Shown piece after piece: positions 46,895 through 56,860 of a stretch of 60,625 nucleotides of DNA. A model generated the notes under the pieces. It was not told where the DNA came from. It made no database searches and saw nothing but the letters and a program-made list of their open reading frames with translations. Each line of letters begins with the position of its first letter. The stretch's first letter is position 1. Source of the DNA: Vitrella brassicaformis CCMP3155 (Eukaryota > Protista > Chromerida); the NCBI GenBank assembly GCA_001179505.1, contig CDMY01000516.1, positions 1 to 60,625 on the forward strand, given 5' to 3'. A program made the position numbers and the translations under genes.

Positions 46895-47194
46895 NNNNNN
46901 NNNNNNNNNNNNNNNNNNNNNNNNNNNNNNNNNNNNNNNNNNNNNNNNNNNNNNNNNNNNNNNNNNNNNNNNNNNNNNNNNNNNNNNNNNNNNNNNNNNN
47001 NNNNNNNNNNNNNNNNNNNNNNNNNNNNNNNNNNNNNNNNNNNNNNNNNNNNNNNNNNNNNNNNNNNNNNNNNNNNNNNNNNNNNNNNNNNNNNNNNNNN
47101 NNNNNNNNNNNNNNNNNNNNNNNNNNNNNNNNNNNNNNNNNNNNNNNNNNNNNNNNNNNNNNNNNNNNNNNNNNNNNNNNNNNNNNNNNNNNNN
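46895..47194. other. Assembly gap (300 N)
   Basis: N run. Confidence 1.
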
Positions 47195-47270
47195 GGCCTC
47201 GATGCGATGCATACCATAGGTACGGGCATGGGCATGCGGTGCAGTGCATCTATGTGTGCACACATTACCT

Positions 47271-50200
47271 TCATAAGGGTATTTGTGGATCGACCCATGA
47301 GGGCATGCAGGGCTGCCGTATACGGGTGCGTGCCTGTGGGTGTGAGGAATTCATCGACGAGTGAACTGAGCCCAAAAAGCATATCACAGAAATGTCACAT
47401 GCATCACACCACAACGCAGCACAACAACCGCCTATGTCTGTCCGAATCTTACACTCCCTATTTATTTCCGCAGCGTCTTCCTCGCGGCACCTGGTCACAG
47501 AGGACATGTGCATTCGAGCCTTGTCTCCCATCCGTCCTGCTCGCTCACCGAGCTCCGCTCTCCTGGCTGTGGCTGCGAACTGCAGCGACGTGATGGTGTC
47601 CTTGACGGCGGCTTGGCTGGGCGACACATGCAGCAGTATCACACACTTGGCCGACTCGCCTGCAGACAGGGCGAAAAAGTCGTGTCGTGCATGTCTCTCT
47701 TTTTCCTGATGCCACGTGCCCACCACCCACCAAGGGTGTCTTTGAGGAGCATCGTGAGCTTGGACTTGTCATAGGGCACAGAGGCCTCCTTCTTGCTCAG
47801 CGACTGGCACACACACGCCTCAATCGTGTCTCGGTTGGCCTGCCTGTGTACTCACACACACCTACCTGAATGACGTCTCTGAAGGCGCTGACGCCTGCCT
47901 TCCTGACCACCAGCTCAGAGCCAGCCAGCTGCACCATCGTCAGCTTGCCTGAAGAGCTGGCGGCCCCCTCAGCTGCAGGGGCGATCTTCGCGCGAACCGT
48001 CACGATGCTGCAATTACATCACGCAGAGAGCACTTAGACGGCACAATCGCGTGTGGCTCTCTGTCGTCCCTTCGCTCACAGGTTCGATTTGGCTGAGTGC
48101 TCCTCCATGTTTTTGGCGAGGGTTGCACGGTGGGCAGAGGCCTCAGACAACACAGCTAAGGCCTGATGGTGAGGAAGATGGATTATCGATGTGTGAGGAC
48201 CTCAAACGGCAAAGTGGATGGATGGCGTAGGTGTGTGTGTGCCTACCTCCTCGCCACTATTGACTGTCCGCTCGGTCAGCCCAGGCACACTCGAGTCCTG
48301 ATGACAAGACAAGCAGCATCACATACCAATCCAGAAGGCAGAGACGGGAGAGGAGATGTGTTAGCCCACCTCTCACCTCTTTGACGGCCAGCTTTTTGGA
48401 TCTTGGGTCGCCGCGCAGCAGGTCATGCACATCATCGTTGTGCACCTCTACGCGAACGACACACACACAGAATCCGCGACATGCACAGAGAGCTGAGGTG
48501 GTCTGTTGGCAGCAAGTAAGAGTACCTATGGCCGCCATGGTGATTTGGACCCTGCCCTCCGCCGCCCGTGAGTCTCTCACGGCAAACAGCTCCGCCAACG
48601 CTGAAAGGTACATGCAGACAGCAACAGGAAGCATGATTGTGCATTCTTGTAAACACGATTGCCGTCCTCCTCACATCGACTCATGAGCCCTGGGGTGTCG
48701 GGAGTGCCCATCTGCAGAGGTGGAAAGAGCGGCCAAGCACAACCATCAGGTCGCTGTGTTGCTCCGTGGTCGTGAGTACCATCGTCTCTGTCTTGTTGGT
48801 GCCCGTGGGGCCATATGCGATGACACTTGCGTTGAACCCGTCAAGCACCGACAAGACCACACCACGGCAGCGCTCAAACACGACATCTGCACACACACAC
48901 ACAATACGCCAGCATCAGCATGCAATCCGCACCCACCTGTGTCTCGTCTCAACCGATCTATCTGCCCACTCACCTTGGCCGTCTGCCGGTCCAAGCACCC
49001 CATCGACATCGAATGACTGTACATTTGTGTCAGCATCGGTGTAGATGCTCAGGCGGCTCTCATCCTCAACCAGGGTGGTCGCACGGCCCTTCGGCTCATG
49101 ACGCTGCAGACATACATACGTTCATTGATCAGGACGTGCAATCCAGCACAGCTAGATCAAGATGGTTTGGGGATGTGCAGTCGCTGACCGCCTCGTCGGC
49201 TGTGAGGGGCCGAATCCTCGCGAAGAGACGGATGTTGCCCTTGGCCTCGAGCAGCTGCAGACAATGCAGAACAAGCGACATGCCGCGCCGCGTGCTACTG
49301 TGTGAGAAATGATCGCAGTCAATACCTGGTTGAGCATGTCTCTCCGCTCGGCCATCATCGCCTGGATCCTATAGACATCCATCCATCCACCCTCACTTTT
49401 CAACCAGAGATGGCGTGGGCATCCATCCATCCACCATCCTGTGACGTGACCGACCTGTCATCCTTAGCCGCAATGAGAGCACTCTGCTCTTCCAACGCAC
49501 CCTGATAACCAGGAGACACAAGGCATGGCGGGAGCCATCCAGGCAGACGTCTTTGTGCCGCTCACCGCGAGGTTTGGTAGCAGCACGTTGAGGACTTCGT
49601 CGCGATTCCTCTCCATCTCAGACCTCACCCGACGGTTGTCAGACCTGCACCACACGCATACACACACACGCACGCACGCACACACACTTAGACACATGTT
49701 GATCACATCAATTTTCCTGGCCTCCCCCCCTACCTGAGGCGCAGCACGGACGAGCGGAGAGACTGGACAGTCGGCACAGACCCGGGAGGAATGTGAATCG
49801 GCCTGAATGGATGCAGCAGATGCAGCAATGGGCGTTGTGTATCCGCCGCACGGGTATGTGTTGTGTGCGATGTTGTCAGCTGACTCAGTCTCATAGAGTT
49901 CTGGCGCGTCGGTGGGTGGTGGCATGTGTGCAACGTCGTCTAGAAAGGGGTCAATAGCAATGTCTTGAGGGCCGGCTGTGCTGGGAGGGAGCTGGCTCGC
50001 TCCCTCGCTACTCTCATCGTCCTCACCCGCTAGCACGGGCGACGACCGGACCGCTGCCAGCGTGGGGGACGCATCGGCAGCTGTCTGGTGCTCGGCCTCG
50101 TCCAAGGCTTGCCTCAACTGACACACAGACAACACACATCACGCAGACAATGTGGCTGCCCTCGCCTGTGTGAGGGTGTGGTGTGTGAGAGTGCGGCGCA

Positions 50201-51586
50201 CTGACGGCGTCGTTTTCAATCTGCAGTTGGAGGACATCTGTTGCCGGTTCCAAGAGCATGGTGGACCTCCTTCTCGCCTGGTCGGCCACGGTGGTGAGAC
50301 GTCGTGTGATGAATGTCTTGAGGGTCACTCCCTCCCTCTGTGCGCTCTGCCGCAGCTTGAGGATGGCCTTGCGCCACAGGAACTGCGCATCGGACATGGC
50401 GGGCAGCATGCCGGCCGGTGGCGGCACATTGGCACGCACTATGGCGCGCTGCAGCCCCAACACCCATATACGGAGCTGCGCAGAAAAAAGACACAATTGT
50501 CGGTGTCTCTCTCCGCGTGTGGAAGTGTGTCTCTTTGTTCTGGCTTGCCTCGTGTTCGTGAATGCACGCAAGGTCGACGGTCCGGTCTGCGAGTATGAGT
50601 GAGAAGCACATGAACGAGGGGTCCTCCAGGTAGCTGCTCCGGAGGAAGGTGCTCGTCACGGGGCCGTACACCACACCCAAAACCTCCTCGAAACCGACCT
50701 GATGACATGAAGTATCATGCCATGCCAACCGTCGCACAGACACCGACATTTGTTTTATTTTGGTCTTGCGTGCGTCTGTACCTCTGAGAAGGAGCCGCCC
50801 TTTTTGTTGGCCCATCTGAGTTTCCTGCCCTCGTCCGCCAGCCACACGTACACCTGCTTCCTCTTGTAGTTCCCATAGTTATACTTGTGCAAGTAAGACC
50901 CATTCTGCCAAGAAACAAGCATTGCATTCACTCAGACAGGGGCGGTGGGACAGCAGACATGCACACACAACAAAAGCACTGACCGCGAGTCCTTCGGCGA
51001 GCAGTTCGGTTTTCCTTGTCTCGGTTTTGATGGATGCCTCGATGGCTTCCCACCACCTGTCAAAGTCGGCCTCCGTCTCAGCCGTCAACACGTACTCGAC
51101 CGAACGAGGCAGCGTCGCATTCAGCTGCACACATACATTCACACATCCACACAGGCATGACAGACAGTCATGCAGAGTCTTCGAGTGTGTCCCTACCGTG
51201 ATTGTTTTCAGCCCTCTCTTTTCCAGCGCCGCCCCATTGAAAAGGTACACGCCCTCACGCAGCACCTTCCTGGTGCCGAAGCTCATCAGCTGGAACCGCC
51301 GCAGCTCCCCGCTCCTCAGCACAAAGTACTCATCGGCCGAGGTCTCCTCGTTCAGAAGGTTGCCCCGACACTCGATGACGGGGAATCGTGGGAGGGCAGT
51401 GATGCATGAGGGGGGGATGATGGCTTTGGAGGGGACGCGCATGGTGCTCCTCCGCTTGTTGAGGGGCTGCGTGTTGACGGACCGCACGGAGGCGTCGAGT
51501 TCGCCATCGGTGTAGTCCTTGGAGACGGGTGCGGCCACAGTCACTGATGTGATGGACGCACGAGAGGCACGAGCTGCTTTCGCCAT
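47271..51586 (-). CDS. Kinesin-14-like protein (C-terminal motor) with two N-terminal PH domains and degenerate nucleotide motifs; 3' end approximate
   Basis: PH1: EYFVLRSGEL..YVLTAETEADFDRWWEAI. PH2: YLHKYNYG..LRW..YGPVTSTF..CFSLILADRTVDL. Neck: AERRDMLNQLLEAKGNIRLFARIRPL. Motor: LDGFNASVIAYGPTGTNKT, GKLTMVQLAGSE, VPYDKSKLTMLLKDTLG, VSPS..DTITSLQFA. Confidence 0.85.
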
Positions 51587-51737
51587 CGTAACTCTCGATA
51601 GGGCCCCCAGGAGAAACAGAGAGAAATAATGAAATAATATGAGAAATAATGAGAAGGAACAAAGTTGTTGAGAATACACCACTGTACACCCAGAGACGTC
51701 CATGAATGCACCTCCCGTCTCCCTAGCCCGCCCCCTG

Positions 51738-53828
51738 TCACACAGCTCTCTGCCCCATGTAGGCCACCTGCCACACCTCCATCACATCCCACCCACCAGT
51801 AATGGTGTGCATGCTGCCGTGGGATCTTCTCGGGCCGCTAAGAAGGGGCCTCTCTTTCTTGCTAGCTGCAGCTATCTCTGCGTCATGATGAAATGGCGCC
51901 GCAAGGTCGACAAAAAGAGAGTCTACGGTAGTCGCGCCTGCTGTACGCAAGGCACAAAACGCCAACCCCGCCATCCTGTTGCTGACGATGACACCAGATG
52001 TGTCCCCTGTCTTCTTGGTGACGGCGTCGGGGTGGTGTGCGTCGGCCAGCTTGAAGAGAAAGGGAATCGGCTCCTGTGAAGAGCGGTTGTAAGCACTACA
52101 TTCACACACACACACACACAGGAGAGCCAAAGAGAGCAAGGAAACATTTGCTCACAGCCTCAACAAAACGATAGCGTCCAACAGACTTACTCGATGTGAG
52201 GGCCATTCTCGAAGACGCCGCACGGAGCCATTCCGTGTCTGTCTTGAACCCCTTGGGGCTAGCGGCACCCACCACCTCCTCACCCTTCTTCAACAGCAAC
52301 ATCTGCACACCCAGACACAGCCATGCACCATATGTCAACTGTGGCCATTGCTGTCGTCTGCCATACTCACCCAGCCCTTCTCCGCCTCTGGTGCTGGGAT
52401 GCTCGCCAGGAAGGCAGCGCCATCGTACGCGGCTGCCAACGAACAACTGAGGAACAAAGACATCCATATTGCCCAGGTGCTTCCTCCCGCCCATATACAC
52501 CTAAATACGCGTGCGTACCTGTAGGTGCACTGTATGTCCTCTACAGGTCGCTTCCATTCCTCCTCCAGCCAGCCCACAAGCCTATTCAGCTCTGCCCGCC
52601 CTCCCAGCAGCCCCATCCCCGGCCCTCCCATCGACGGTGCGATGCGCTGCACACAGTGCCCATGTGCACCGATGAGACCGAACATCTCGAGTGTCCGGCG
52701 CAGCTCCAGTGTGTCGTTGGCCGATGACTGCTGCGAGAGAAAGATTGTGAGGCATTGGGAGGGTGCAAGGCGGTGTTGGCGGGCGAAGTTGATGGCCTTG
52801 CGGACAATCGCTGGTGACGTGGCGTCCAACGAAGACCTAAGGCAAGAGCAAACAAGCGTTCACACGTGTGTTACCCTTAGCATGTGTCGTGTCCGTACTC
52901 ACCCGTTGAAGCGATTTGCGAACGGCGAGTCGCCCCCGCCACATGCCTCTACAGTGGCCGTGGTCGTGCTGAGAGTCATCCCCACCACACTCAGGCTCAC
53001 TACCCCGACCCCGCTCCCCGTCGACGGCTGCAGCCAGGGCCCGGCCAGCTTCATGCGATCCTCGAGCTGCCGCATGGCACATTTGACGGCATCGATCTGC
53101 GCGTCAATGGCCGCATGCTCCTTCATGTACCCCTCACACACCGACTTGATGCTGTCCATGAGTGCCGCGCTTGACGGCATGGCATCCTGCACTCTGGGGG
53201 TGTGAGGCATGGCTGGTGCGTCCATGGCGTTCACAAACAATACGGCGTCCATGTTTCGGGGAGGGGGGCCGGGGGAGGGGGTGACAGTGGGGAGGGGCTT
53301 GTTGACCAGCACGTCGAAGAAGAAGGCCTCGTCAGGGTCACCGCTGCTTTGCGCCTGACTCGCGCTGCTGCTGCTGCCGTCGTATGTTGCCAGGGCATGG
53401 ATGATCTTCTCGAAGATGCGGTCGTCGAGGTCAAGGAAGATGCGATTGGATCCATTGTCGGTGCAGCGAACCAGCCGTCCGTCGAGATGGCCGCTGAAGA
53501 TGAACGCCAGCAGGCTGTCAGCCTTCTTGGTCAGCCAGCCGCGAGGAATGTCATACGGCGTTCCGCCCGCCGACAGCTGGAGCCTCTCGTTGGCATCACC
53601 GGCGGCATCCTCCTGCCAGCTGATCTCATTCAGCAGCCGCTGCTTGGCGCTCTGCAGCTCCTCAAGGGTCTGTTGCTTGGCTGTGAGGGCTCGTGTGGCG
53701 TCGTCGATGGCGGCAGTGAAAGAGCGGATGGCACGGTCCGCGAAGGCTGGTCGCGACGGAGAGGGGAACTGATCATCGCTGTCACCATCAGGCGGCCCCT
53801 TGCGCTTCTTAAACTCCGACATCATCAC
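51738..53828 (-). CDS. BTB(KCTD-type)-BTB-TLDc-like protein
   Basis: BTB1: LQLSAGGTPYDIPRGWL..SLLAFIFSG..RIFLDLDDRIFEKII. BTB2: VSLSVVGMTLSTTTATV..FANRF..DATSPAIVRKAINFAR. The C-terminal exons are only weakly TLDc-like (CTYS..AAYDG..MLLLKKGEEVVGA). Confidence 0.65.
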
Positions 53829-54411
53829 TGTTTTTCAGTTGCGAGCTGGAAAGGGCGTTTCGATCCGCCAAAGATCTTCGATCCCTGCATCAAATGCCGT
53901 AGATCTTGCGTCATACGAGGTCCTCCGTGCTGGGAAACCTTCGTGTTATGACCGCAGAAGCGACAGATGTCATTCGATCGCAAGAGATGCCGCCTGCTGT
54001 GCCGTGAGAGCCTCGGAGGGCCTTGATCACTGACGGCGGGCGGCACAATGGATGCAGACGAGGCGAGGAAGATCAAAGAAGGCGTTAAACACACACAGCG
54101 CCTTTCACCTTTCGGCTGCTGTGTGTGTTGCTTGGTTGTTTGATGCAGCAGCGGCAGCTTCGGGAGGATGCTCAGTTGGCGAGCGACAGCCTGAAACGCC
54201 TCATGCAACTTCAGACAAAGGTATTTAGGCCAAACACAGCAGCCACATGCTCTCAGTCACTCACCGCTGCCACTGCCTTCTCTCTCTTAGGTTGATGAAC
54301 ACCTCACGCAGATCAAGCAGCGGACGGAGCCTGACAATAAGGACACAGTGGTATGAATCATTACCTTCGCCTCACCCCTCTTTCTGATGAATCACGCGTT
54401 TTGCTTTCTGG

Positions 54412-56860
54412 TTGTCCATGCAGGCGTCAGCTCGCGAGCTGCGTGTCCACCTGTCCCTCCTCACTGCTCAGTGCAACGCTGCCGCCACCCAGCTGTCGAC
54501 ATTGGAGCCTCTGCTGGCCAGTGCAGTGGATGCCCTCATAGCCATACAGCTGTCGACATTGGAGCCTCTGCTGGCCAGTGCAGTGGATGTCCTCATAGCA
54601 ACGGCCGCTGAGCCGCAGGCACCAGTAGACACCGTAGAGGAGCAGCCACAGGTACACCTGCACGACCACAGAGAGCTCCATGCGGAGAGGATTGCTGCAC
54701 GTGGTCTGTGCGACGTGTTTGTTTCCATTGTGAGGTTCAGGCTGCTCCTGCTGAGAAGTCTTATCGTTTGATCTACGAGAGTGGCCAGCCGCCCAACAAA
54801 AATGTACCGGTGAGTGATGACGCACACAAGCATCCACTTCCATTCAGTCACACGTGTGTCATATGTACCGGCCCTATAGGCCCGCTTTCGTCTGTCCCGC
54901 GATGAGCCCTCCGACGTCTTCGGCCACCTGCAGCCCTGGGAGCTGACGCGCTACCGCCGGCCCCTCGGCACGCCTCTCTTCCATCAGTCGGCCGCCAACT
55001 ACACCCACCTGGTCATCGACTGTAAGGACGACACGGCGAGGCGCATGTGGGAGACCATGCCGCTGGCCGTGGCGCAGAGATGGGGCAAGAGGGCAACCAC
55101 CGGGCGAGAGATCAAGCACCGCTACCCCGAGTCTTCACGGACTTGGTGCCGCGGGACCTGGGTGGCATTGGTGGAGGGTCGTGTGAGCGGCCGAGCGGCC
55201 ATCGCAGAGAAGGAGAGGCAGGAGGGGCTGGGAGGGGAGGGGGCTGCTGCTGCCGCAGCCGGGCAAGCTTACGACGGCAGCCAGTCGGCTGACGAGAGCT
55301 CACTGGAATTGTTGTCATTCGAGGAGGTCAAGCTTGAGCGGAGCATTCGCATCCCCGACCCGCCCCCCTCATCTGATCTGCCGCCCGCCCCCTCCGCCCC
55401 CGTCCACCTGCCGGCACTCAAGACCGTCGACAATATACCCAGCGAGCGCCTGGCTGCTCGCGTGGGGCGCAAGTGGTGGACACCTGCCGTCAAGACGCTC
55501 ATCATTCGACGCCGTGTGGCTGCGTTAGATGTGGAGGGTGCGAGGGCGTGGCTGCCGGACTGTGACGCCATTGAGGCGCTCGACCTCGACAGCTGGAGGG
55601 CCGAGAGGGCGGCCGGTGTGCTGAGTGCGCTGCCCGCTGACGGGAAGTCGCTCGCAGCGCTTCAGACACTGCGCGGCATCATGCTGTGGGACCTCACGGC
55701 CATCGACAGGCTACGTGAGGTGCTGGTGGCGAGGGGGGTCAAGCGGTCGATCAGCGAGCTCAAGATCGACATTGTTGGTCATCTGTGGAACACAGACGAG
55801 GACTGGGAGAGACTGCAGAAGGCCGCACAGCTCGTGTAAGGACACATCAGAAGGGGAACGGGATTACGTCTGTGACGCACACCGATGTGCTCGTCCTTCG
55901 GTGATTTCTGCAGTGACGCTGTTGCGCATTCCCAGGCGTTGTTGCAGCGCATTGTGCGTGACGGTGGCGGACATGGACGCATAATATATATGGACATGGA
56001 GCTCCTCTCGCGCAGCAGCAGCACCGGGACCCCCACTGTCCAGAAGCTCGCCGGCGAGTACGCCAAGACAGTCGACTTCGTCGCCTACAGCGGAGGGGAC
56101 GAGGCCCATCGTGTGGCCATCACCGACGACACATTCCCCGCCGCCCACACCCTGCGCCTGACACGCAATGCCCTCGCCGATGCGGCCAAGAAGAACCGCG
56201 CCCTCGAGATCGCCTCTCACATGCCCAGCCTGTCGTGCATCCAGGCAGGAGACCACCAGAACGACACTGTGCTGAACGCGCCTGTCAGTGAGATGTGGAT
56301 GTTCCTCGAGCGGCTGCAGGCGGCGCTGGTCAGCAAGGGGAGGGAGAGGAGCCTGACGCTGGAGATGCTGAGCCTGTCGGTAAGTGCATTCGCCGACGAG
56401 CGCCAGAGTCCCTGTCTGTGGTGGCGGGACAGCAATGAGAAGCTGCCGCCGATCAAAGAAGTGACTGTCTATATTACGGGTGAGCGGGAATGGGACAACC
56501 AGCAGTCGCATCGTCTGTGTGCGGTGTCTGTGTTCATTCGTTTCAGATGTTGTAGGGAATGGTCAGTTGGAGACCTTCTACCAGCGCGTGATGGCCTCGG
56601 TGGCCTCCTTCAGCAATGAGCTCAAGGTGGGCCGCACACCACACCACACAGACAGCTGCGGGGCAATGTGTGTGTGCCCACTCTCCGGTTGGCTGAATGG
56701 ATAACAGGGCCACAAGAAGACCACCGTGCGTTTGTGGCACCATGTGCGCACCGACTTTGAGCGGCGTTTCCTGGCTGAGCAGGCCACTCTCAACTTCAAT
56801 GGCGGCCCGTACAAGTTCAGCTCCCATCGCTACGGGCTGGTTGTAGAGCGCCGCACGTGA
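54412..56860 (+). CDS. Member of a Vitrella-type lineage-expanded family of unknown function (F-box/LRR-like repeats possible)
   Basis: LQPWELTRYRRPLGTPLFHQSAANYTHLVIDC..RRMWETMPLAVA..WCRGTWVALVEG..PAPSAPVHLPAL is recalled as typical of a large Vitrella family. GT-AG exons run to TGA 56860; the 5' end is uncertain. Confidence 0.6.
54490..54600. repeat. 57-bp coding tandem duplication (QLSTLEPLLASAVD(A/V)LIA x2)
   Basis: cagctgtcgacattggagcctctgctggccagtgcagtggatg starts at both 54490 and 54547. Confidence 0.9.

What the first reader, a model, noticed from the sequence alone, without database searches (positions are those of the whole stretch)
47271..51586. PH-PH-kinesin-14 whose motor looks catalytically dead (Vik1/Cik1-like)
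Seen: the P-loop is GPTGTNKT (canonical G..G.GKT), switch I is NMEEHSAKSN (canonical N..SSRSH) and switch II is QLAGSE (canonical DLAGSE). Loop 11/helix 4 is shortened by roughly a dozen residues. The neck (KGNIRLFARIRP) and the microtubule-binding region (PYDKSKLTMLLKDTLG) are kept, and the gene is otherwise intact. Established: yeast Vik1 and Cik1 are non-catalytic partners of kinesin-14 Kar3; PH domains bind phosphoinositides. Inference: a membrane-to-microtubule tether, or a heterodimer partner for an active kinesin-14.
Basis: partly seen in the sequence, partly recalled or inferred. Interest (0 to 1): 0.7.

Follow-up and report, generated by a model that had tools for sequence, protein, structure and literature searches.

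The report
Vitrella PH-PH kinesin-14 with degenerate motor
An expressed, correctly spliced gene of the alga Vitrella brassicaformis joins two membrane-binding PH domains to a kinesin-14 motor that has lost all three ATP-handling motifs, while every relative found keeps them, so it is probably a motor turned into a static linker.

Summary
The locus is a 22-exon minus-strand gene (CDS 51586/51442 to 47462). Every intron is backed by spliced contigs from public runs. The product equals a Vitrella brassicaformis transcriptome protein (P0001, 791 aa).

- **Architecture:** PH (FAPP-like), PH (PLC-delta-like), short linker, about 70-residue neck coil, C-terminal kinesin-14 motor.
- **Motifs:** the P-loop reads GPTGTNKT, switch I EEHSAKSN and switch II QLAGSE. 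Fourteen residues of loop 11/helix alpha4, including INKSL, are deleted inside a single exon. PYRNSKLT reads PYDKSKLT.
- **Relatives:** all 118 nearest kinesin-14 motors are canonical, and so are about 12 orthologues that share the PH-PH module.
- **Divergence:** Vitrella has one copy. Its motor sits on a 9-fold long branch and deviates at 29 of 86 near-invariant columns, against 0-3 in typical relatives. It still models as a confident kinesin fold.
- **Other features:** the PH-PH invariants are kept, the stalk is halved, and a homodimer model passes its controls.

My reading is a lineage-specific pseudokinesin, most likely a non-motile dimeric membrane-microtubule linker. It is not a Vik1/Cik1 family member, and nothing supports a heterodimer. 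Loss of ATPase and the tether role are inferred, not measured.

The parts
47462..51586 (-). Whole coding region: 22 exons, about 839 aa from ATG 51586, or 791 aa from ATG 51442 (the start of P0001). Stop codon at 47462-47464.
   Evidence: Spliced contigs. Exon arithmetic and open frame. Identity to P0001.
50984..51586 (-). Exons E1 (51197-51586) and E2 (50984-51124): N-terminal extension plus PH domain 1 (FAPP/PLEKHA3-like) with a long C-terminal helix.
   Evidence: Fold model with pLDDT 82.8. Family profile hits PLEKHA3 PH at E 3e-5. Orthologue P0005 passes Pfam PH at 31.6 bits.
50206..50904 (-). Exons E3 (50782-50904), E4 (50549-50698) and E5 (50206-50475): PH domain 2 (PLC-delta-type, YGPVTSTF at 50645-50668) plus two further helices. 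The E4/E5 intron 50476-50548 is GC-AG.
   Evidence: Family profile hits the PLC-delta1 PH domain 1mai at E 1.6e-7. Foldseek match to 1mai with TMt 0.73. Family invariants retained.
49734..50117 (-). Exons E6 (49885-50117) and E7 (49734-49802): acidic and proline-rich linker. It stands where orthologues have a coiled-coil stalk about twice as long.
   Evidence: Alignment A1. Stalk is 182 aa against 344-431 aa.
49326..49644 (-). Exons E8 (49566-49644), E9 (49455-49501) and E10 (49326-49368): neck coiled coil.
   Evidence: Homodimer model gives a parallel in-register coil over residues 400-471, score 0.44 against best control 0.09.
49189..49254 (-). Exon E11: kinesin-14 neck-motor junction, KGNIRLFARIRP at 49207-49242. 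The RxRP nucleotide-base motif is kept.
48780..48886 (-). Exon E13: P-loop GPTGTNKT at 48789-48812. The canonical form is GQTGSGKT; the changes are Q>P and Walker-A G>N.
   Evidence: Gapless alignment to kinesin structures..
48080..48162 (-). Exon E18: switch I, EEHSAKSN within 48082-48111. The canonical form is NEHSSRSH.
47866..48007 (-). Exon E19: switch II QLAGSE at 47914-47931 (canonical DLAGSE), and the site of the 14-residue loop 11/alpha4 deletion (RKAGV^SAFRDVIQ, 47866-47904).
   Evidence: Contigs cover the exon without differences. Alignments.
47731..47803 (-). Exon E20: loop 12/alpha5, VPYDKSKLT at 47753-47779. The canonical form is PYRNSKLT, so this is R>D.
47462..47659 (-). Exons E21 (47549-47659) and E22 (47462-47490, including the stop): end of the motor (beta8, alpha6) and a short C-terminus.
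48247..49103 (-). Remaining motor exons: E12 (48974-49103), E14 (48675-48711), E15 (48526-48600), E16 (48377-48447) and E17 (48247-48297).
   Evidence: Pfam Kinesin covers residues 480-779 of P0001.

Best explanation
**What the gene is (shown).** This is a real, transcribed, single-copy Vitrella brassicaformis gene. It belongs to an uncharacterised protist family built as PH-PH module, coiled-coil stalk, then C-terminal kinesin-14 motor.

**What changed in Vitrella (shown).**
- The motor has drifted at every element that binds or hydrolyses ATP and couples that to microtubules. These are the Walker-A glycine, the switch I Asn/Ser/Arg/His, the switch II Asp, loop 11 with the start of helix alpha4, and an Arg of loop 12/alpha5.
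- The rest of the motor fold, the neck coil and the PH-PH module are preserved.

**How it likely works (inferred).**
- It no longer works as a microtubule-stimulated ATPase or minus-end motor.
- It acts as a parallel homodimer. The tandem PH domains bind a phosphoinositide-bearing membrane, and the dead heads serve as a nucleotide-independent microtubule- or tubulin-binding or scaffolding module. That makes it a static linker rather than a transporter.

**Odds.** The 0.6 given is for the pseudo-motor claim. The specific membrane-to-microtubule tether role is about 0.35.
For: **Gene and transcript.**
- Spliced contigs in two runs support the introns.
- The frame is open across 22 exons.
- The product is identical to an independent transcriptome protein.

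**Kinesin-14 identity.**
- Pfam Kinesin matches at E 1.1e-60.
- The nearest hits are KIN-14 and KIFC3-type motors.
- The motor is C-terminal and has the GNIR neck.

**Degeneracy unique to Vitrella.**
- All 118 nearest motors are canonical.
- Seven more PH-PH family members from metagenome contigs are also canonical.
- P0001 deviates at 29 of 86 columns that are at least 92% conserved, against 0-3 in typical relatives.
- The terminal branch is 3.67 against a median of 0.42.
- Other Vitrella kinesins keep the motifs.
- No hidden canonical exon exists in any frame of the window.

**Orthology.**
- The N-terminal module matches P0005, P0006 and P0007 at E 1e-43, 3e-55 and 3e-33.
- The AU test does not reject one clade (p 0.84).
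- The genome has a single copy.

**Continued constraint.**
- The PH-PH invariants are kept.
- The motor model has pLDDT 89 and TM 0.85-0.88 to solved kinesins.

**Homodimer.** The model scores 0.44 against a best control of 0.09. That mark was reached by 21 of 30 proteins solved as pairs and 0 of 23 solved as single chains. The runs agree in at least 91% of contacts and partner pLDDT is at least 80.

**Established knowledge (my own).** Walker-A GxxxxGK[ST], the switch I Arg to switch II Glu salt bridge, the switch II Asp-Mg contact and the INKSL Asn are each needed for kinesin ATPase or coupling.
Against: - No biochemical measurement exists.
- The P-loop Lys-Thr, the switch II Gly and Glu, RxRP and two switch I serines remain. 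Nucleotide binding or slow hydrolysis therefore cannot be excluded.
- Microtubule-contact residues are also altered: R>D in PYRNSKLT, alpha4 is shortened and R>T occurs in alpha6. Microtubule binding itself may be weakened, which undercuts the tether role.
- Lipid binding by the PH domains is not tested, and one basic residue of the PH2 beta1-beta2 motif differs from the orthologues.
- The AlphaFold model was built with an alignment of active homologues, so its confidence partly reflects them.
- The dimer pass may come from the model's memory of Ncd or Kar3 structures.
- No close Vitrella relative is available, so purifying selection on the motor could not be quantified (no dN/dS).
Confidence: 0.6

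Rival explanations
1. It is a Vik1/Cik1-style non-catalytic partner. The dead head heterodimerises through its neck coil with a catalytically active Vitrella kinesin-14 and tunes that motor's microtubule binding.
For: The head is dead but folded, and about 70 residues of neck coil are retained. Precedent exists in Kar3-Vik1 and Kar3-Cik1 (PMC4338441). Unchecked scan notes list other kinesin-14 and pseudo-kinesin loci in this genome.
Against: No partner was identified. Vitrella has no second member of the PH-PH family. The self-pairing model passes its controls. The active orthologues have the ordinary homodimer-type build. The best other Vitrella motor matches that I checked are not clearly kinesin-14.
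Confidence: 0.1
2. It is still an active but highly divergent motor or ATPase that uses an unorthodox active site.
For: P-loop K564 and T565, switch II G703 and E705, RxRP and two switch I serines are retained. The fold is predicted with confidence.
Against: The changes occur together: Walker-A G>N, switch II D>Q, switch I R>K with S>A and N>E, and deletion of the INKSL segment. None of about 130 relatives tolerates even one of these. The one partial exception is P0082, which has its own P-loop change.
Confidence: 0.12
3. It is a gene in decay. After loss of the ancestral transport function the motor is drifting neutrally, and the protein has no remaining motor-domain function.
For: The branch is 9-fold long, the stalk is halved, and catalytic and some microtubule-binding residues are both lost.
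Against: There are 22 exons with no frameshift or stop, and the transcript is spliced. P0001 keeps 57 of 86 near-invariant motor columns and all 23 invariant columns of the PH-PH alignment. The changes concentrate at functional sites rather than spreading evenly.
Confidence: 0.1
4. It is an artefact: mis-assembly, a wrong exon model, or alternative splicing hides canonical motifs.
For: An assembly gap lies at 46895-47194, and the genome annotation (P0154) differs from the transcript model.
Against: The gap lies outside the CDS. DNA contigs and RNA-type contigs agree with the window with 0 differences over the motif exons. An independent transcriptome protein is identical. No canonical motif exists in any of six frames.
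Confidence: 0.02

Closest known systems
Uncharacterised PH-PH-kinesin-14 orthologues of marine protists: P0005 (JGI metatranscriptome), P0006 (EukProt GILK01006532), P0007/P0125 (MMETSP), P0009 (Logan) and loci L002-L006, L008, L009
   Same: They share the tandem PH module (27-38% identity, invariants shared), the C-terminal kinesin-14 motor and the GNIR neck.
   Different: They keep GQTGSGKT, N..SSRSH, DLAGSE, INKSL and PYRNSKLT, and have a 344-431-residue stalk. Vitrella has lost all of these motifs and has a 182-residue stalk. Their source organisms are not known to me.
Canonical kinesin-14 motors: Ncd, Kar3, KIFC3, KCBP and plant KIN-14
   Same: C-terminal motor, neck-motor junction and overall fold (TM 0.81-0.87).
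   Different: The nucleotide motifs and loop 11/alpha4 are degenerate. The N-terminal cargo module is tandem PH rather than a microtubule-binding tail, CH, MyTH4-FERM or malectin domain.
Vik1 and Cik1 (budding yeast Kar3 partners)
   Same: A kinesin-14-associated head that cannot hydrolyse ATP yet sits behind a coiled coil.
   Different: Vik1 and Cik1 lack the ATP-binding structural elements and act only as heterodimers with Kar3 (PMC4338441). Here the sequence is a recognisable kinesin with P-loop remnants, no partner is known, and a homodimer is modelled. This is an analogy, not membership.
KIF26A/B (kinesin-11) and similar animal kinesins reported to lack ATPase
   Same: A recognisable kinesin motor sequence that has lost ATPase activity and is used as a binding or scaffold module (PMC12783630 for KIF26A).
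   Different: A different kinesin family with an N-terminal motor, no PH domains, and found in animals. Here the loss is confined to one species' copy of an otherwise active family.
PLC-delta1 PH and FAPP1/PLEKHA3 PH domains
   Same: The family profile matches them at E 1.6e-7 (PH2) and 3e-5 (PH1), and the fold matches too.
   Different: Lipid specificity is unknown, and not all PLC-delta1 ligand residues are conserved.

Membership tests
Kinesin superfamily (motor domain, PF00225) | Sequence match to the motor-domain profile above the curated cut-off | tested here: met
   205.8 bits against a cut-off of 29.3, E 1.1e-60, over residues 480-779 of P0001. The match is also found exon by exon.
Kinesin superfamily (motor domain, PF00225) | Kinesin motor fold | tested here: met
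   AlphaFold model with pLDDT 89. Foldseek TM 0.85-0.88 to KCBP, KIF3B and Ncd. This is a prediction, not a solved structure.
Kinesin-14 | C-terminal motor preceded by a coiled-coil neck ending in the GN(I/V)R junction | tested here: met
   KGNIRLFARIRP follows the coil directly. The motor ends 8 residues before the stop.
Kinesin-14 | Nearest relatives and tree position lie among kinesin-14 motors | tested here: met
   The top 120 hits are KIN-14 and KIFC-type. The tree with the AU test is compatible with the PH-PH kinesin-14 clade. The long branch makes the exact position uncertain.
Catalytically competent kinesin | P-loop GxxxxGK[ST] (GQTGxGK[ST]) | tested here: not met
   GPTGTNKT: the glycine before the lysine is Asn, and Q is Pro.
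Catalytically competent kinesin | Switch I NxxSSRSH | tested here: not met
   EEHSAKSN: N>E, S>A, R>K and H>N, each at a column invariant in all 37 relatives.
Catalytically competent kinesin | Switch II DxxGxE followed by loop 11 and the INKSL start of alpha4 | tested here: not met
   QLAGSE, and 14 residues including INKSL are deleted.
Catalytically competent kinesin | Microtubule-stimulated ATPase | not testable with these tools
   Needs purified protein.
Vik1/Cik1 motor-homology-domain proteins | Head lacks the structural elements for ATP binding and has no kinesin sequence signature | tested here: not met
   P0001 is about 41-42% identical to the motors of its active orthologues and keeps the K-T of the P-loop and LAGSE.
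Vik1/Cik1 motor-homology-domain proteins | Obligate heterodimer with a catalytic kinesin-14 (Kar3) | tested here: inconclusive
   No partner was found. The self-dimer model passes (0.44 against 0.09), which does not exclude a heterodimer.
PH domain (tandem) | PH fold or profile match | tested here: met
   The model shows two seven-strand sandwiches, each capped by a C-terminal helix. The family profile hits the PLC-delta1 and PLEKHA3 PH domains. Four of 6 members hit PF00169. P0001 alone is below the Pfam cut-off (21.9 against 25.1 bits).
PH domain (tandem) | Phosphoinositide binding | not testable with these tools
   Basic residues are present in beta1-beta2 of PH2 (K136, K143, R144, K145). 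Binding was not measured.

The most novel reading that the evidence does not exclude
A previously undescribed family of tandem-PH kinesin-14s serves as minus-end-directed membrane motors in diverse marine protists. Vitrella has converted its only copy into a static, dimeric, nucleotide-independent crosslinker. This crosslinker fastens a phosphoinositide-marked membrane, for example the alveolar or inner-membrane-complex sacs, to cortical microtubules. It would be a caught-in-the-act example of a motor becoming a structural protein in the lineage leading towards apicomplexan pellicles.
Probability: 0.2. Interest if true: 0.65.

Novelty: new variant of a known kind. Interest (0 to 1): 0.48.

Why it matters
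Pseudo-enzymes derived from motors are few and mostly ancient (Vik1/Cik1, KIF26). Here an active family and a single degenerate member can be compared side by side. That shows which residues go first and which parts stay under constraint: the fold, the neck coil and the cargo module.

The active PH-PH-kinesin-14 family is itself undescribed in the literature I could search. It is a candidate minus-end membrane motor of marine protists.

Vitrella is a free-living relative of apicomplexan parasites. Their cortex depends on stable membrane-microtubule links, so a motor-derived static linker would bear on how that pellicle is built. Unchecked notes of this scan suggest several more degenerate kinesins in the same genome. 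If those hold, the theme would be motor-to-scaffold conversion across the genome.

Tried and rejected
1. **Exon searches against solved structures.** The switch II exon alone found nothing. The P-loop exon worked.
2. **Third homology search wasted.** A profile search with the full-length alignment A1 returned only unrelated animal kinesins, because of how candidates are chosen by shared words. The N-terminal region alone found only itself. Orthologues were recognised instead by pairwise comparison of the motor hits and by a metagenome pattern scan.
3. **Free tree search.** It placed P0001 outside the PH-PH clade because of its long branch. The constrained tree was actually better by 6.6 log-likelihood units. 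I do not read the free placement as evidence against orthology.
4. **Alternative canonical exons.** None exists in any frame of the window.
5. **Second PH-PH copy or close paralogue in the genome.** None was found. One weak PH-like hit lies on contig C300.
6. **Partner candidates.** The three best other Vitrella motor loci that I looked at have canonical motifs. At least one looks kinesin-1-like. I found no basis to name a partner, so no heterodimer was modelled.
7. **Taxon of the orthologues.** A paper search for the accession prefix GILK01 gave nothing. The P0005 contig is an unnamed JGI metatranscriptome record.
8. **Literature on a PH-domain kinesin-14 or on Vitrella kinesins.** Nothing relevant came up. 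Only open-access papers are searched.
9. **Joined spliced protein.** Exons were searched by reference. The full-length work used the identical database protein P0001 that one of those searches returned.
Full report
**Locus and gene model.** The window is contig C516 of a 72.7-Mb, 1064-contig assembly. Database names identify it as Vitrella brassicaformis CCMP3155.
- Stop-to-stop reading of the minus strand between 47.2 and 51.8 kb showed kinesin and PH-like pieces broken up by short introns. Exon-wise Pfam scans confirmed Kinesin (PF00225) fragments and weak PH and Mcp5_PH signals.
- I laid public runs on 47201-51900. Two of them (X1, X6) hold spliced contigs, one 2586 nt long. Their joints all have CT..AC ends on the + strand, which is GT-AG on the minus strand.
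- From these joints, the contig arithmetic and the splice-site dinucleotides, I derived 22 exons. One intron is GC-AG (50476-50548). One 89-nt intron (49645-49733) holds a GT microsatellite that the read tool had masked.
- The frame is open from ATG 51586 to the stop at 47462-47464.
- A representative-library search used the in-frame stretch E1-intron-E2, given by reference. It returned P0001, a 791-aa UniRef protein from a Vitrella transcriptome. P0001 equals my exon model letter for letter from the second Met (51442).
- The genome annotation (P0154, CEM19591.1, 1314 aa) fuses an upstream gene and skips 29 residues. The RNA-type contigs do not support that model.
All full-length work used P0001.

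**The observation.**
- Alignment of the P-loop exon to solved kinesins is gapless: AYGPTGTNKTETM against AYGQTGSGKTYTM.
- The alignment with orthologues refines switch I to EEHSAKSN against NEHSSRSH. It gives switch II as QLAGSE against DLAGSE.
- It also shows a 14-residue deletion that removes the end of loop 11 and the INKSL start of helix alpha4.
- That deletion lies wholly inside exon E19, which contigs cover without a difference. It is not a splicing artefact.
- No canonical P-loop, SSRSH, DLAGSE or INKSL is encoded in any of the six frames near the gene. Alternative splicing therefore cannot restore the motifs.
The last intron (47491-47548) was read through.

**Is it unusual?** Yes.
- A motor-region search returned 1436 kinesins. 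The 118 closest, all kinesin-14 types, every one carry GQTG[STA]GK[TS], N..SSRSH and DLAGSE. The one exception is P0082, whose P-loop reads GVTNSGKT; its switch I and II are canonical.
- In a 38-motor alignment, P0001 deviates at 29 of the 86 columns that are at least 92% conserved in the others. Typical relatives deviate at 0-3.
- The deviations cluster in four places:
  - P-loop: Q559P, G563N.
  - Switch I: N666E, S670A, R671K, H673N.
  - Switch II with loop 11 and alpha4: D700Q, four deleted near-invariant columns, S712G, L713V, L716F, G717R.
  - Loop 12/alpha5: H729S, R733D, N734K.
- Three other Vitrella kinesin loci that I looked at keep canonical motifs. This is therefore not a genome-wide peculiarity of sequence or code.

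**Orthologues.**
- The best motor hits P0005, P0006 and P0007 also match the N-terminal 270 residues of P0001, at E 1e-43, 3e-55 and 3e-33. A local scan added P0125, P0009, P0126 and P0082.
- A metagenome pattern scan with the N-terminal alignment found seven more loci carrying a motor (L002-L006, L008, L009). All have the YGPxTTTF PH2 motif followed by canonical motor motifs.
- A family of PH-PH-stalk-kinesin-14 proteins therefore exists with active-looking motors. I could not learn which organisms they come from; the sources are MMETSP, EukProt, JGI metatranscriptomes and Logan.
- Vitrella has only this one copy.
- In a motor tree P0001 has a terminal branch of 3.67 against a median of 0.42. 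The free search left it outside the family. The tree with the family held together had a higher likelihood and p-AU 0.84. The motor data are therefore compatible with the orthology that the N-terminus shows.
- Among eight other members, motors are 55-86% identical and N-termini 34-59%. Vitrella against them is 41-46% and 27-38%. The motor has lost most of its usual extra conservation, while the PH-PH module has kept all 23 family invariants.
- The stalk between the PH module and the neck is 182 residues, against 344-431 in the others.

**Domains.**
- The motor models as a confident kinesin fold: pLDDT 89, TM 0.85-0.88 to KCBP, KIF3B, KIFC3 and Ncd. Loop 11 and helix alpha4 are short in the model.
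- The N-terminus models as two PH folds joined by a long helix and followed by two more helices, with pLDDT 82.8.
- Foldseek finds tandem-PH proteins and the PLC PH domains.
- The family profile hits the PLC-delta1 PH domain (E 1.6e-7, PH2) and PLEKHA3/FAPP1 PH (E 3e-5, PH1) by sequence alone.
- Both reference domains are phosphoinositide binders (my knowledge). Binding here is inferred only.

**Oligomeric state.**
- A two-copy model of residues 400-791 gave ipSAE 0.44 in three runs, against a best control of 0.09. The runs agree in at least 91% of contacts, and partner pLDDT is at least 80.
- The tool's mark was reached by 21 of 30 proteins solved as pairs and 0 of 23 solved as single chains. 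It warns that a pass may come from memory of solved relatives.
- The interface is a parallel, in-register coil over residues 400-471, as in Ncd-type dimers. This supports, but does not show, a homodimer of two degenerate heads.

**Mechanism.** What follows rests on established kinesin enzymology (my knowledge).
- The glycine before the Walker-A lysine contacts the beta-phosphate through its backbone.
- The switch I Arg pairs with the switch II Glu to close the active site.
- The switch I serines and the switch II Asp hold Mg2+ and the gamma-phosphate.
- The INKSL Asn couples microtubule binding to nucleotide release.
- All of these are changed or deleted together, so loss of microtubule-stimulated ATPase and motility is the best inference (about 0.8 for that narrow point).
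- The gene is nevertheless intact, spliced, and conserved in fold, neck coil and cargo module. A new non-motor role is therefore more likely than decay.
- The simplest role is a static dimeric link between a PH-bound membrane and microtubules.
- R733D, the shortened alpha4 and R776T touch the usual microtubule interface. Microtubule affinity may therefore be altered, and a pure scaffold role cannot be excluded.

**Comparison with the known.**
- Non-catalytic kinesin-related heads are known. Vik1/Cik1 have a motor-homology domain that binds microtubules but lacks the ATP-binding elements, and they work only as Kar3 partners (PMC4338441).
- KIF26A is described as an atypical kinesin lacking ATPase activity (PMC12783630).
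- The present protein works like these in concept but belongs to neither. It is a kinesin-14 by sequence, topology and neck, and it fails the three catalytic-motif tests.
- I found no paper on a PH-domain kinesin-14 or on Vitrella kinesins.

**Earlier scan notes.** A word search of this scan's notes lists seven other first-reader notes of candidate pseudo-kinesins on other pieces of the same genome. I did not test them. If they hold, this locus is one of a set, and the scan has seen the theme before on other DNA.

**Verdict.** The Vik1/Cik1 label and the heterodimer idea are not supported. The tether idea is plausible but untested. It is a new variant of a known kind (pseudokinesin) inside an undescribed active family. 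Interest is moderate.

Noticed in passing
window 51650-54500 (minus strand), protein P0154: The public genome annotation (CEM19591.1, 1314 aa) fuses an upstream gene to the kinesin gene and skips 29 residues of the linker. The upstream gene contributes about 550 aa, and I judged it BTB/T1-like by eye only. The spliced contigs start at 51617 and run unspliced through the annotated acceptor, so two separate genes are more likely.
   Followed up: partly
window 50476-50548 and 49645-49733: One GC-AG intron sits among 21 introns. One 89-nt intron consists largely of a GT/GC microsatellite, which the read-laying tool masked as a repeat (49649-49694). That masking at first hid the exon 7/8 junction.
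   Followed up: yes
protein P0082 (Logan, 609 aa): This second divergent family member has only the PLC-delta-type PH domain. Its P-loop reads GVTNSGKT, with canonical switch I and II. It deviates at 11 of 88 conserved columns and has a branch length of 1.77. It may be an independent partial degeneration.
   Followed up: partly
G000:C300:102029-102259 (+): A weak match (E 0.005) to the PH2 region of orthologue P0006. It may be another PLC-delta-type PH domain gene in Vitrella.
   Followed up: no
window 46895-47194: A 300-N assembly gap lies about 270 bp downstream of the stop codon, within or just past the 3' UTR. It does not touch the CDS.
   Followed up: yes
window 51549: A G>A difference appears in one contig each of two DNA-type runs (X5, X2), 31 letters from the contig ends. 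It lies within the first 48 codons upstream of the P0001 start. It may be an allele or a contig-end error.
   Followed up: no
other contigs of G000 (scan notes): First-stage notes list seven further candidate pseudo-kinesins in this genome. If real, Vitrella carries an unusually large set of degenerate motors.
   Followed up: no
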